Positions 51,501 to 54,427 of a stretch of 64,000 bases of DNA are shown here, in pieces. The stretch is taken from positions 930,001-994,000 of the forward strand of contig CAJFCJ010000002.1 in the NCBI GenBank assembly GCA_904063045.1, written 5' to 3'. Both the position numbers and the translations under genes were made by a program. Every line of letters begins with the position of its first letter. Positions within the stretch are counted from its first letter, which is position 1. The notes under the pieces were generated by a model. The model was not told where the DNA came from. It ran no database searches and saw nothing but the letters and a program-made list of their open reading frames with translations. Source of the DNA: Dimorphilus gyrociliatus. Taxonomy: Eukaryota > Animalia > Annelida.

Positions 51501-54427
51501 TGTTTTGATAAGTGTTTGTATCGGCCGAAATTATCTAAATTTAGATCCGACCCTCATGGCATGGCCTGTAAACTCTCTATTTCAATATATTTCTATTGTC
51601 TGCTGTTTGAAGTGCATGTTTTCAGTGTTGATCCATAGAGATACGAGGGTTAAAATGGCTGATACAGAGGAAAATGAATTTGAAAAGACGGTGGATTTTA
51701 TATATTTGCGAGAACTAAAACCTTCACCTGATTTTCAGAACACAGCAAGCTTGGACGATTTCGACCGTATGAAGACTCTTGGAACAGGGTCATTTGGCAG
51801 AGTAATGCTCGTACAGCATAAGGCTACCAAAGAATATTATGCCATGAAAATACTCGACAAGCAGAAGGTGGTCAAATTAAAACAGGTTGAACATACGCTT
51901 AATGAAAAGCGCATTTTGCAAGCTATTACGTTTCCTTTTCTGGTGAAGATGGAGTACAGTTTTAAGGTAATACTAACGACAATTCTTACTCAACTATTCC
52001 ACATCTAGTAATAATACCTGTATTTTTTCAGGACAATTCGTATTTATATATGGTACTTGAATTTGTAACGGGTGGAGAAATGTTTTCCCATTTAAGGAAA
52101 ATAGGGCGTTTTAGGTATGTTGAAAAAATTGAAGATTCGTAAATGAAATTGTATATCAACAAAAAAAGTCGCCTTTTAAAAGCTAATTTGTGTACAAACG
52201 AACTATATTTCAGTGAACCTCATTCTCGGTTTTATGCCGCCCAAATTGTTCTCGCCTTTGAATATCTTCACTCGCTGGATCTCATTTATCGAGATCTAAA
52301 ACCGGAAAATTTGCTAATTGATTCAAAGGGTTACATAAAAGTAAGAAATGAAAAATCTTACTGTTTCTTGTCACTTTCTTTTCTCTTGCGCATGTGGAGA
52401 AAATCTTGTTTGTTTAATCAATTTAGTTAGAAATTAAAATGTTAACTTCACTGCTTGACCTTTTTTGCACCCGAGAGCTCTATATATCTTTGTTATTACC
52501 ATAATTTCAGTGAGAATCAAACTCGTTTTTACGCCAATCAAATTGTTTTGGTATTGGAGTATTTACACAACCTCGACATAGCGTACAGAGATCTGAAGCC
52601 TGAAAATTTATTATTCGACATATGGGGTTATCTAAAGGTCAAAAATTCGGATGATTAATTACTATTTAGTAACTGAAGAAAGGAAAATTTAATTTCTGTG
52701 ATATTTAGCAAAATTTTAGCTTCTGAATTATTGAACTTCATTCAAATACTACTAACGTAAAATATGATTTTTGTTGTGAATTCTAAAACTGATTAGTGTG
52801 CCAGTCAAAATAATCAGTTGCTTGCTCTGAAAAACCTGATTTTCCTGCTATTCCTTTCCCTTTAATTTTCGATTACTCTGAAAATGTTATCTTTATATAT
52901 TCAATCTGTTTTTCTTTATAGGTAACAGACTTCGGATTTGCTAAAAGAGTTAAGGGTAGGACGTGGACATTATGCGGAACACCCGAGTACTTAGCCCCAG
53001 AAATTATTCTGAGTAAAGTGAGTATCATTATGGCACATTGCAAAGCATAAAAGTTTACTTTTTTGTTTGTTTATCTACTTTTCTTTAACAAGTAATCTTT
53101 TTCGAACGCATTGTGAAGGTTGAATAAAGGTGCATGAATTTCCACAACTAACAATATTCAAAAATAAATTCAGAGTAGAATTTGATGGATAATAGTTCTT
53201 TTGCTGTTACACTTTGCAGCAATTTTTCTTTATCTGACATTATCATACATTATGGATTAACTATCTAACTTAACTTGCTTTCTGTCTTCACTGATCACAG
53301 TCTGGAACAATTCTATTGAATGGTTAGAATTGTTCAATACTGATATGAATTGTTAGGAAAATCCTTCCTACATTGCTAATTCCCACAGGGATACAATAAA
53401 GCTGTCGATTGGTGGGCAACTGGAGTTCTTATTTACGAAATGGCAGCAGGCTACCCGCCGTTTTTTGCCGATCAGCCAATACAAATATATGAAAAAATCG
53501 TCTCGGGGAAAGTGCGCTTTCCTTCCCACTTTTCTCATGATTTGAGAGACGTACTGAGAAATATGCTTCAAGTAGACCTCACTAAACGTTTTGGAAATTT
53601 GAAAAACGGTGTGAAGGACATTAAGGAAAGCAAGTGGTTCAGTAACGTAGATTGGATACAACTCTACCATGAACAAGTGGAGGCACCTTTTAAGCCAAAA
53701 ATCAAATGCGCCGGGGATACTAGTAATTTTGATGATTATGACGAAGAGCCTTTAGTCATAGCGAAAAGTGAAAAATTTACAAAAGAGTTTTACGACTTTT
53801 AGACTTAACTTTTTTTAGCACATTGATGAGTATATTATTAATTGTTAGCAATCCATGTTGCCGAAGTGTTAATATAACCCTTGTAATCAAATCTGGATGA
53901 TTGCTCATTTGCCTGAACCTTCACAAATTGCATTCGGAAATAAATTTAAAAATATTGCAGTACTTGTTTAGGTGTTAATTTTTACCGATGACATTAATTT
54001 TGTTAAAAAATAGGGTTACAACAAAGCTGTCGACTGGTGGGCTTTGGGTGTTTTGGTGTATGAAATGGCTGCCGGCTATCCTCCGTTCTTTGCCGATCAA
54101 CCTATTCAAATTTATGAGAAAATAGTTTCCGGAAAGGTGCGATTTCCTTCCCATTTTTCGAATGATCTACGGGACTTGTTGAAGTCTCTACTGCAAGTAG
54201 ATTTGACGAAGCGCTTTGGAAATTTGAAAAATGGAGTCAACGACATAAAAAACCATAAATGGTTTGGAACGACGGACTGGATAGCCGTTTATCAAAGAAA
54301 AGTTGAAGCCCCATTTGTTCCAAAGTGTAAAGGACCCGGAGATCCGAGTAATTTTGATGATTACGAAGAAGAACCTTTGCGAATATCAAACACTGAAAAA
54401 TGTGCTAAGGAATTCGCCGACTTCTGA
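48450..54427 (+). CDS. PRKACA: cAMP-dependent protein kinase catalytic subunit with alternative first, internal and terminal exons
   Basis: Canonical path: 51047-51089 [14 protein letters not shown], 51290-51351 [12 protein letters not shown], 51739-51966 LGTGSFGRV...YAMKILDK, 52032-52114, 52214-52340 YRDLKPEN, 52922-53017 TDFGFAK...[14 protein letters not shown], 54014-54427 GYNKAVDWW...EFADF*. Symbol denotes the PKA-C family; an invertebrate gene is co-orthologous to PRKACA/B. Confidence 0.97.
49500..49583. repeat. TA-rich microsatellite in the PKA-C 5' intron region
   Basis: Direct reading. Confidence 0.8.
49694..49706 (+). other. Candidate 13-nt PKA-C microexon giving N-terminus MAD-FKQFL
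   Basis: Polypyrimidine acceptor TTCTCCCTTTTCTTTATAG, GCT ATG GCT GAT T, donor GTATGT; phase 1 fits exon 2. Confidence 0.45.
52511..52637 (+). other. PKA-C mutually exclusive exon 5b (paralog of 52214-52340)
   Basis: Same 127-nt length and phases; [43 protein letters not shown]; intact splice sites. Confidence 0.9.
53389..53802 (+). other. PKA-C alternative terminal exon 7a (paralog of 54014-54427)
   Basis: 414 nt, same as 7b; own acceptor CCCACAG and own stop; [12 protein letters not shown]...[10 protein letters not shown]. Confidence 0.92.

What the first reader, a model, noticed from the sequence alone, without database searches (positions are those of the whole stretch)
53389..54427. 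Duplicated PKA terminal exon; copy 7a has lost the Ser338-equivalent turn-motif site and the Cys343 equivalent
Seen: two 414-nt exons in tandem, each with its own acceptor and stop. 7b ends [21 protein letters not shown] (canonical-like). 7a ends [21 protein letters not shown] and also has WWATG and KESKWF. Known: Ser338 in RVS is the cis-autophosphorylated turn-motif site needed for maturation of mammalian C-alpha, and Cys343 is the second reactive cysteine. The FxxF motif, FDDY and YPPFF(A)D contacts are retained in both copies. Inference: 7a encodes an active kinase with altered C-tail regulation, chosen by alternative 3' splice/polyadenylation.
Basis: partly seen in the sequence, partly recalled or inferred. 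Interest (0 to 1): 0.75.

Follow-up and report, generated by a model that had tools for sequence, protein, structure and literature searches.

The report
Two alternative PKA tail exons
A small marine worm's single protein kinase A catalytic gene carries two tandem copies of its last exon, both used and both kept by selection, so it makes a standard kinase and a second form that lacks the usual tail phosphorylation site.

Summary
Exons 7a (53389-53802) and 7b (54014-54427) are 414-nt tandem copies, in the same phase, each with an AG acceptor and a stop. Both align without gaps to residues 214-350 of mammalian C-alpha. Copy 7b has R336/S338/C343; copy 7a has V336/A338/K339/S340/F343.

Copy 7a is a real coding exon. 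An RNA contig joins the last 14 nt of exon 6 exactly to 53389. A relative about 18% diverged in DNA keeps 7a intact, with the same tail residues (dN/dS 0.02). The duplication is old (synonymous sites saturated) and appears lineage-restricted.

- Alternative 3' splice-site choice is shown.
- A poly(A) site between the copies is not shown. Contigs read through into 7b, and the AATAAA is AATACA in the relative.
- Kinase activity is untested.
- Ala338 and Phe343 alone are not rare in invertebrate PKA-like tails. What is unusual is that Arg336 and any Ser/Thr at 338/339 are both missing.

New here: a conserved 22-bp core RNA duplex pairs intron 6 (53099-53121) with the spacer after 7a (53916-40), touching the AATAAA. 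It would loop out 7a and favour 7b. This is inferred, not tested.

This is a new variant of a known kind, of moderate interest.

The parts
52922..53017 (+). Exon 6 (DFG to APE region, residues about 182-213). It is the common donor for both terminal exons and ends on a complete codon (phase 0).
   Evidence: sequence. One search gives joints 53017->53389 and 53017->54014, both GT..AG.
53099..53144 (+). Upstream arm of the candidate long-range RNA duplex, in intron 6. The core is 53099-53121. It forms a conserved island in an otherwise poorly conserved intron.
   Evidence: Conservation is shown.
53305..53335 (+). Conserved local hairpin (10-11 bp core) 54-84 nt upstream of the 7a acceptor. Its role is unknown; it may help present the 7a branch site or acceptor.
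   Evidence: I2; it folds in both species; the outer stem changes G-C to A-U.
53374..53388 (+). 7a acceptor region. It holds a CTAAT branch-site-like motif (TACTAAT in the relative), a short pyrimidine run and cacag.
   Evidence: 14 of 20 pyrimidines.
53389..53802 (+). Terminal exon 7a: residues 214-350 plus the TAG stop. This is the divergent copy.
   Evidence: The orthologue P0002/L001 is. dN/dS is 0.024.
53755..53778 (+). 7a codons 336-343, V-I-A-K-S-E-K-F. There is no Arg336, no Ser338 and no Cys343, but Ser340 is present.
   Evidence: The same residues occur in the relative.
53803..54013 (+). Spacer between the copies. It serves as 3' UTR for 7a messages and as the end of the intron for 7b messages. 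It is 86% identical to the relative, and over 90% from about 53840 to 53960.
53894..53940 (+). Downstream arm of the candidate duplex. The core is 53916-53940, and its 3' end pairs with the first bases of the AATAAA.
53939..53944 (+). AATAAA, the only canonical poly(A) signal between the copies. It lies 137 nt after the 7a stop and 70 nt before the 7b acceptor. It reads AATACA in the relative.
54014..54427 (+). Terminal exon 7b: residues 214-350 plus the TGA stop. This is the canonical copy, with R336, S338 and C343.
   Evidence: It has no amino-acid changes against the relative.
54428..54590 (+). 3' UTR after 7b, almost invariant between the two species (2 differences in about 165 nt).

Best explanation
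This is the single canonical PKA catalytic-subunit gene of a small marine worm. Its last exon encodes helix F through the C-terminal tail, 39% of the protein. That exon was duplicated in tandem long ago, and both copies serve as alternative terminal exons. Exon 6 splices either to the distal copy 7b or to the proximal copy 7a. With 7b the product is a standard C subunit carrying the RxS338 turn-motif autophosphorylation site and Cys343. With 7a the product keeps every catalytic and docking residue encoded in this exon, namely D220, E230, Y235/F239, helix G, R280, FDDY and FxxF. The 7a form has lost Arg336, Ser338 and Cys343. It also has altered, conserved residues in helices F and H (L224T, L268V) and a re-charged helix I/J and C-lobe-tether surface (N289K, N293E, H294S, R308E, K309Q, I315K). 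The 7a isoform is therefore most likely an active kinase. Its tail cannot be fixed by cis-autophosphorylation at 338, and its back surface differs, so it probably differs in maturation, stability and partner binding rather than in catalysis. The choice is made at the 3' splice site. A conserved duplex between intron 6 and the spacer after 7a would loop out 7a, cover the start of its AATAAA, and bring the exon 6 donor to within about 150 nt of the weak 7b acceptor, so it would favour 7b. When the duplex is open, the proximal acceptor can be used. What is shown: exon anatomy, residue assignments, use of both acceptors, purifying selection, and complementarity and conservation of the arms. What is inferred: kinase activity, the functional consequence of the tail changes, the role of the duplex, and where 7a messages end.
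For: Anatomy and numbering rest. The rest of the gene is canonical: a MGN start, an A-helix exon, and [11 protein letters not shown] and [10 protein letters not shown] motifs. X11 record 14 (666 nt, 0 mismatches) consists of the last 14 nt of exon 6 followed by 53389-54040. Its contig depth (927) is well above that of the intron 6 contig (149). X1 and X2 metatranscriptomes also hold 7a contigs. The 6->7b joints are seen in X1 and X3. Selection: the relative's syntenic contigs L001-L004 keep 7a at 414 nt with no indels. There are 53 nucleotide but only 6 amino-acid differences, while intron 6 has 10 indel events. For 7a, dN is 0.025, dS 1.04 and omega 0.024. Between 7a and 7b, dS is saturated and dN is 0.16. 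V336, A338, K339, S340, F343 and Y348 are identical in the relative. Residues that are unusual for the family are conserved between the two 7a copies. For the duplex, the core is 22 bp (8+3+11). The 48-nt arms give -34.5 kcal/mol in the window and -34.1 in the relative. The best 26-nt window scores -26.1, against -16.9 +/- 2.1 in 98 dinucleotide shuffles, none of which reached it. In the fold of the whole 995-nt segment the duplex has probability about 0.35 in the window, where enforcing it costs 0.7 kcal/mol. In the relative it is in the minimum-energy fold with probability about 1. The two substitutions in the upstream arm fall on a bulged base and a helix-end pair. The 7b acceptor has the poorest pyrimidine tract of the gene, 10 of 20 with an A-run. 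The role of Ser338 as a stable autophosphorylation site needed for a stable, active C subunit comes from PMC3415842 and PMC5095912.
Against: No protein-level or activity data exist for the 7a form. Only one run (X11, library type not on record, perhaps from the source strain) gives a clean 6->7a junction. The X1 6->7a joint comes from a contig with 15 of 81 mismatches, which could equally belong on 7b. No compensatory change supports the duplex, because the arms are nearly invariant and only one independent relative was available. The downstream arm lies inside a longer conserved block, so its conservation is not specific to pairing. In the window species the duplex is not in the minimum-energy fold. 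Global folding of a 1-kb pre-mRNA is a weak predictor. Contigs cannot show RNA ends, so the poly(A) part of the model is open. Ser340, or another residue, might be phosphorylated by a different kinase and replace pSer338.
Confidence: 0.65

Rival explanations
1. 7a is an unused or decaying duplicate (a pseudo-exon), and the transcripts that contain it are splicing noise.
For: 7a evolves faster than 7b: 6 versus 0 amino-acid changes against the relative, and a 0.19 stem in the tree. In X1 and X3 the dominant junction is 6->7b.
Against: The frame is open and exactly 414 nt in both species, with no indels, while the flanking introns have many. Omega is 0.024 with dS about 1. A spliced junction contig sits well above intron depth in X11. 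The duplication is old enough to saturate synonymous sites, yet the frame survives.
Confidence: 0.03
2. The tail phosphorylation is rewired rather than lost. Ser340 (K-S-E-K), or another tail residue of 7a, is phosphorylated by a different kinase and plays the turn-motif role. Maturation of the 7a isoform would then depend on an outside signal.
For: Ser340 is kept in both species' 7a. Ser/Thr at 340 is the commonest state in invertebrate tails. In other AGC kinases the turn motif can be phosphorylated by a heterologous kinase (PMC3415842).
Against: Position 340 also holds Thr in 7b and in most canonical tails that have Ser338, so it is not a relocated site. There is no Arg at -2 or -3 for PKA itself. 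No phosphorylation data exist.
Confidence: 0.2
3. The choice is a pure alternative 3' splice-site decision with one shared distal poly(A) site. 7a messages run on through the spacer and 7b, which becomes 3' UTR. The spacer's conservation would reflect 3' UTR or splicing signals, not an RNA loop.
For: Contigs in X11, X1 and X3 are continuous from 7a across the spacer into 7b. The AATAAA is not conserved, reading AATACA in the relative.
Against: Continuity in contigs also arises from unspliced precursor RNA. A canonical AATAAA followed by a GU/U-rich stretch exists in the window species. The arms' complementarity exceeds all shuffles and is kept in the relative.
Confidence: 0.35
4. Use of 7a mainly lowers output of the canonical kinase by diverting transcripts. 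The 7a protein itself would matter little.
For: 7a appears to be the minor form (depths are only a rough guide).
Against: Purifying selection acts on the amino-acid sequence along the whole of 7a, including the tail (omega 0.011 for residues 289-350). A mere decoy would not need that.
Confidence: 0.05

Closest known systems
C. elegans kin-1 (PKA-C) isoforms with alternative C-termini (Gross et al. 1990; Tabish et al. 1999, as listed in the references of PMC9692727). Details of the C-terminal variants are from my own memory, because the papers were not held.
   Same: One PKA-C gene makes isoforms that differ at the C-terminal end through alternative 3' exons, alongside many N-terminal variants.
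   Different: Here the alternative exon is a full-length homologous duplicate covering residues 214-350. It keeps FDDY and FxxF and differs by point substitutions. It is not a replacement of the tail by other sequence.
Aplysia C(APL-A) A1/A2 mutually exclusive exon cassettes in PKA-C (Beushausen et al. 1988). This is from my own memory; the related 1992 paper was not held.
   Same: Tandem exon duplication inside a PKA-C gene gives two homologous, alternatively used modules. The same gene here also has such a pair (5a/5b, helix E and the catalytic loop), and both are spliced to exon 6.
   Different: The Aplysia cassettes are internal. The pair studied here is terminal, and each copy has its own stop.
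Vertebrate PRKACA/PRKACB splice variants (C-alpha1/C-alpha2 and the C-beta variants; PMC3625193, PMC13425070).
   Same: Isoform diversity of a highly conserved catalytic subunit arises through alternative exons.
   Different: Vertebrate and mussel variants differ in 5' exons (N-termini) only. Exons 2-10 are constant.
Long-range intron RNA pairing that selects among alternative exons, such as docking/selector pairs in insect mutually exclusive exons and 'RNA bridges' that promote skipping. This is general knowledge. The same genome has an earlier, unverified note of an exon bracketed by an intronic duplex (s1-081214).
   Same: Complementary conserved arms lie on either side of an optional exon, and pairing would loop it out.
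   Different: The looped-out unit here is a terminal exon together with its poly(A) signal. No covariation or experiment supports it yet.

Membership tests
PKA catalytic subunit (C-alpha/C-beta-like AGC kinase) | Full-length, gapless similarity of the C-lobe and tail to solved C-alpha structures | tested here: met
   7a scores E 3e-70 and 7b E 1e-83, both covering residues 214-350 without gaps. The next best family (yeast TPK1, PKC, PKN) scores far lower.
PKA catalytic subunit (C-alpha/C-beta-like AGC kinase) | Catalytic and docking residues in this exon: D220, E230, Y235/F239, helix G, R280, W296, FDDY 327-330 and the C-terminal FxxF | tested here: met
   All are present in both copies.
PKA catalytic subunit (C-alpha/C-beta-like AGC kinase) | Upstream exons encode a myristoylatable MGN start, the A helix, the glycine loop, the catalytic loop, DFG and the Thr197 activation loop | tested here: met
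   (sequence read exon by exon).
PKA catalytic subunit (C-alpha/C-beta-like AGC kinase) | Turn-motif autophosphorylation site R-x-S338 | tested here: not met
   It is met in 7b (R-I-S). It is not met in 7a (V-I-A, then K-S) in either species. The site is also absent or shifted in about a third of PKA-like tails sampled, so it does not define family membership.
Alternative last exons arising from tandem exon duplication | Two homologous exons in tandem, in the same phase, each with its own acceptor and stop | tested here: met
Alternative last exons arising from tandem exon duplication | Both copies spliced to the same upstream exon in RNA | tested here: met
   6->7a is shown by the exact X11 contig. 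6->7b is seen in X1 and X3.
Alternative last exons arising from tandem exon duplication | A separate cleavage/poly(A) site for the proximal exon | tested here: inconclusive
   AATAAA lies at 53939-53944 but reads AATACA in the relative. Contigs read through, and contigs cannot show ends.
Splice choice controlled by long-range RNA pairing | Complementary arms flanking the optional exon, stronger than chance | tested here: met
   The observed score is -26.1 against -16.9 +/- 2.1, and none of 98 dinucleotide shuffles reached it.
Splice choice controlled by long-range RNA pairing | Pairing kept in relatives, ideally with compensatory changes | tested here: inconclusive
   The duplex is kept in the one relative available (-34.1 kcal/mol, and in its minimum-energy fold). 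No compensatory change was seen, because the arms are almost invariant.
Splice choice controlled by long-range RNA pairing | Disrupting and restoring the pairing shifts the isoform ratio | not testable with these tools
   This needs minigene or genome-editing experiments.

The most novel reading that the evidence does not exclude
The two duplicated regions of this gene may be co-adapted modules: 5a/5b (helix E, catalytic loop, beta-7) and 7a/7b (helices F to J and the tail). These segments pack against each other in the C-lobe core, as I recall from PKA structures. Both minor copies carry core substitutions, for example I174F in 5b and L224T, L268V and L272M in 7a. If 5b and 7a are preferentially joined, one gene would encode two alternative, internally co-evolved kinase C-lobes, with RNA structures such as the 7a-bracketing duplex coordinating the choice.
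Probability: 0.15. Interest if true: 0.75.

Novelty: new variant of a known kind. Interest (0 to 1): 0.45.

Why it matters
PKA-C is the reference protein kinase, and its tail phosphate at Ser338 is regarded as part of making a stable, active enzyme. This gene offers a natural isoform, kept by strong selection, that dispenses with that site and its Arg336. It keeps every catalytic contact, and it sits beside a canonical isoform from the same gene. That gives a clean pair for asking what the turn-motif phosphate and the helix I/J surface contribute to maturation, stability, and binding of the regulatory subunit or an inhibitor. It also gives a compact, testable case of a terminal exon that may be looped out by intron pairing which overlaps its poly(A) signal. 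Finally, it shows that PKA-C diversity in invertebrates is not confined to N-terminal exons.

Tried and rejected
1. Wider search for 7a-type tails. The word search with the 137-residue exon found only one clear 7a orthologue, P0002. All other hits score much the same against 7a and 7b, or better against 7b. That search cannot see full-length proteins because of its length limits.
2. Metagenome scan with the 7a-specific half. It returned only distant AGC kinases.
3. Exact look-ups of the 120-residue reading frames of 7a and 7b. They gave no further relatives, so no covariation test of the duplex was possible.
4. Tree of 65 C-terminal pieces. It is an unresolved star and cannot date the duplication.
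5. Unrestricted duplex folding of the whole intron against the spacer. It was uninformative and was replaced by windowed scans.
6. Rfam scan of 52600-54700. It found nothing in the spacer, only sub-threshold hits on the TA/TG repeat after 54588, so a hosted known small RNA does not explain the conserved block.
7. The bacterial promoter/terminator scan is irrelevant here.
8. Papers on the C. elegans and Aplysia precedents were not held.
9. The zero depth over 54109-54590 in all four runs is treated as the tool's stated human-likeness filter acting on the very conserved 7b, not as a finding.
10. Contig depths were not used to quantify isoform ratios, as the tool warns against it.
11. The big representative-library protein search was not run. 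Clusters at 50% identity would merge both isoforms.
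Full report
**What is there**

The stretch lies at the 3' end of a compact gene on the + strand, a canonical PKA catalytic subunit. Reading the sequence together with the exon joints in RNA contigs gives the exon map:
- e1: CDS 51047-51089, start MGNAATAKK.
- e2: 51290-51351, the A helix.
- e3: 51739-51966.
- e4: 52032-52114.
- e5a 52214-52340 or e5b 52511-52637.
- e6: 52922-53017.
- Two tandem terminal exons: 7a 53389-53802 and 7b 54014-54427.

Every intron is GT..AG. 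Exon 6 ends on a full codon, and both terminal exons start with the Gly214 codon. I read the gene exon by exon.

**Checking the observation**

Both terminal exons are 414 nt including the stop and translate to 137 residues. They are 70.5% identical in DNA and 77.5% in protein. Differences by codon position are 28/15/79, and the flanks do not align.

Both align without a single gap to residues 214-350 of solved mammalian C-alpha. The numbering is therefore unambiguous:

| Position | 7b | 7a |
|---|---|---|
| 336 | R | V |
| 337 | I | I |
| 338 | S | A |
| 339 | N | K |
| 340 | T | S |
| 341 | E | E |
| 342 | K | K |
| 343 | C | F |

FDDY, FxxF, YPPFFAD, D220, E230 and R280 are intact in both.

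**Is 7a a real exon?**

Three lines of evidence say yes.

- RNA. A run that carries spliced joints for all introns of this gene (X11) has a 666-nt contig with no mismatches. It consists of the last 14 nt of exon 6 followed directly by 53389-54040. Its depth is about six times that of the intron 6 contig in the same run. Two marine metatranscriptomes (X1, X2) also hold 7a contigs. The 6->7b junction is seen in X1 and X3. The 6->7a joint in X1 comes from a contig with 15 of 81 mismatches, and I do not count it.
- A relative. The word search found a 120-residue reading frame, 95% identical to 7a, from another assembly (P0002). Its genomic contigs (L001-L004, identical to each other here) are syntenic with 50621-54520 at about 82% identity and carry 7a and 7b in the same tandem order.
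- Selection. Against this relative, 7a has 53 nucleotide but only 6 amino-acid differences and no indel. Intron 6 has 10 indel events and 74% identity. 7b has 30 silent differences and no amino-acid change. By the Nei-Gojobori method, omega is 0.024 for 7a (dS 1.04) and 0.007 for 7b.

The 336-343 residues, including V336, A338, K339, S340 and F343, are identical in both species, as is Y348. A third, closer relative (X3) has a contig across 52991-54043 with many indels in the introns and none listed inside 7a.

**Age and spread of the duplication**

Between 7a and 7b, synonymous sites are saturated and dN is 0.16. The duplication therefore long predates the split of the two species. Both copies share Arg266, where 58 of 61 other sequences have Lys, which points to a duplication within this lineage.

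Genomic contigs of three other animals with the same one-piece terminal exon show only a single copy. A metagenome scan with the 7a-specific half found no further 7a-type sequence. A tree of 65 C-terminal pieces is unresolved.

**What is unusual about 7a**

Ala338 or Phe343 alone is not unusual. Among 71 PKA-like C-terminal pieces, position 338 is Ser in 45 and Ala in 17, and the Ala cases mostly read RIAST or RVAST with Ser339. Position 343 is Cys in 44, Phe in 11 and Tyr in 10.

The V-I-A-K-S-E-K-F string is unique to 7a. It has no basic residue at 336 and no Ser/Thr at 338 or 339. Ser340 matches the Thr340 of 7b and of most invertebrate tails, so it is not a displaced Ser338. It also has no Arg at -2 or -3 for self-phosphorylation.

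Elsewhere 7a departs from near-invariant family residues, and these changes are conserved between the two species:
- L224T.
- L268V.
- H294S.
- R/K308E.
- K309Q.
- I315K.
- G320C.

By my recollection of the PKA fold, the first two lie in the core helices F and H. The rest re-charge the helix I/J and C-lobe-tether surface. The substrate, PKI and regulatory-subunit docking elements encoded in this exon are unchanged.

Ser338 is one of the two stable phosphorylation sites of C-alpha and is described as needed for a stable, active enzyme (PMC3415842; PMC5095912). The most likely reading is an active kinase with different maturation or stability and a different back surface. None of that was tested.

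**How the choice is made**

Alternative use of two acceptors is shown. A poly(A) site between the copies is not.

- The only canonical AATAAA (53939-53944) lies 137 nt after the 7a stop and 70 nt before the 7b acceptor.
- It reads AATACA in the relative.
- Contigs in three runs run on into 7b, and contigs cannot show RNA ends.

The spacer is unusually conserved: 86% overall and over 90% from about 53840 to 53960. Looking for a reason, I found that a conserved island in intron 6 (53099-53144) is complementary to 53894-53940.

- Structure. The core has 22 bp in three helices of 8, 3 and 11 bp, with 53099-53121 pairing to 53916-53940.
- Energy. The arms give -34.5 kcal/mol in the window and -34.1 in the relative.
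- Against chance. The best 26-nt window scores -26.1, against -16.9 +/- 2.1 in 98 dinucleotide-preserving shuffles, none of which reached it.
- Whole-segment fold. Folding the whole 995-nt segment gives the duplex a probability of about 0.35 in the window, where enforcing it costs 0.7 kcal/mol. In the relative it sits in the minimum-energy fold with probability about 1.
- Substitutions. The two substitutions in the upstream arm hit a bulged base and a helix-end pair.

The duplex would enclose the 7a acceptor, 7a itself and the first bases of its AATAAA. It would bring the exon 6 donor to roughly 150 nt from the 7b acceptor, which has the weakest pyrimidine tract in the gene. I therefore propose that the duplex favours 7b and that its opening allows 7a.

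This is an inference. There is no covariation, only one independent relative, and the downstream arm sits inside a longer conserved block. No known RNA family matches the spacer.

**Comparison with what is known**

Alternative exons in PKA-C genes are well known, but in vertebrates and the mussel they affect N-termini only (PMC3625193; PMC13425070). C. elegans kin-1 has alternative C-terminal forms, according to titles in the reference list of PMC9692727 and my memory for the details. Aplysia has internal mutually exclusive cassettes, also from memory.

A homologous duplicate of the whole terminal exon that removes the turn-motif site while keeping the rest is, as far as the searched literature goes, not described. 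I class it as a new variant of a known kind.

Depth is zero over 54109-54590 in all four runs. I attribute this to the tool's stated silent filter acting on the very conserved 7b, and I draw no conclusion from it. Depths were not used to rank isoforms. As a hint only, in X11 the 5b->6 junction contig (808) and the 7a contig (927) have similar depths, against about 5000 for the main exons. In X3 the figures would not fit a strict 5b-7a coupling.

**Verdict**

Its poly(A) use and its biochemical consequences remain open. A candidate RNA loop-out mechanism is added. Interest is moderate.

Noticed in passing
window 52214-52340 and 52511-52637: This is a second duplicated pair in the same gene: exons 5a/5b, encoding helix E, the catalytic loop and beta-7. 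Both copies are spliced to exon 6 in RNA contigs (5a->6 in X1 and X11; 5b->6 in X11 and X3). 5a is 100% identical to the relative. 5b is 89% identical with 2 amino-acid changes. The 168-nt spacer between them is 92% identical, which suggests regulatory sequence. The pair was already noted by the scan as s1-084678.
   Followed up: partly
window 54428-54590: The 3' UTR after 7b is almost invariant between the two species (2 differences in about 165 nt). That is far more conserved than synonymous sites of the coding exons. It ends at a TA/TG microsatellite (54602-54710). The function is unknown.
   Followed up: partly
window 51656-51738: An in-frame ATG 83 nt upstream of the exon 3 acceptor would give an alternative non-myristoylated start (MADTEENEF...) if transcription or splicing entered there. 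X11 has only a low-depth contig across it (51322-51690), so it may be retained intron rather than an alternative first exon. Intron 2 is 84% identical to the relative, which is high for this gene.
   Followed up: no
window 53305-53335: A conserved local hairpin (10-11 bp core, 9-nt loop) lies 54-84 nt upstream of the 7a acceptor. It sits between a conserved CTAAC motif (53266-53270) and the acceptor. The outer stem changes G-C to A-U in the relative.
   Followed up: partly
P0001 (public protein, Schistocephalus solidus): This partial PKA-C model contains an exact internal repeat of about 55 residues (VRFPSHF...IYKRE twice). That explains its inflated score. It looks like an assembly or gene-model artefact, not a pair of alternative exons.
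   Followed up: no
public PKA-like C-terminal pieces P0001-P0120: In about a quarter of the sampled tails, many from invertebrates, position 338 is Ala followed by Ser339 (RIAST, RVAST). The turn-motif serine seems to sit one residue later in many lineages. This matters for anyone transferring the mammalian numbering.
   Followed up: partly
window 45584-47355 (+) and 54999-56934 (-): These are the neighbouring genes. Upstream is a nuclear-receptor-type gene with a C4 zinc-finger DNA-binding domain. Downstream, converging on the PKA 3' end, is a TIR/SAM-domain gene that the scan noted separately (s1-082108).
   Followed up: no
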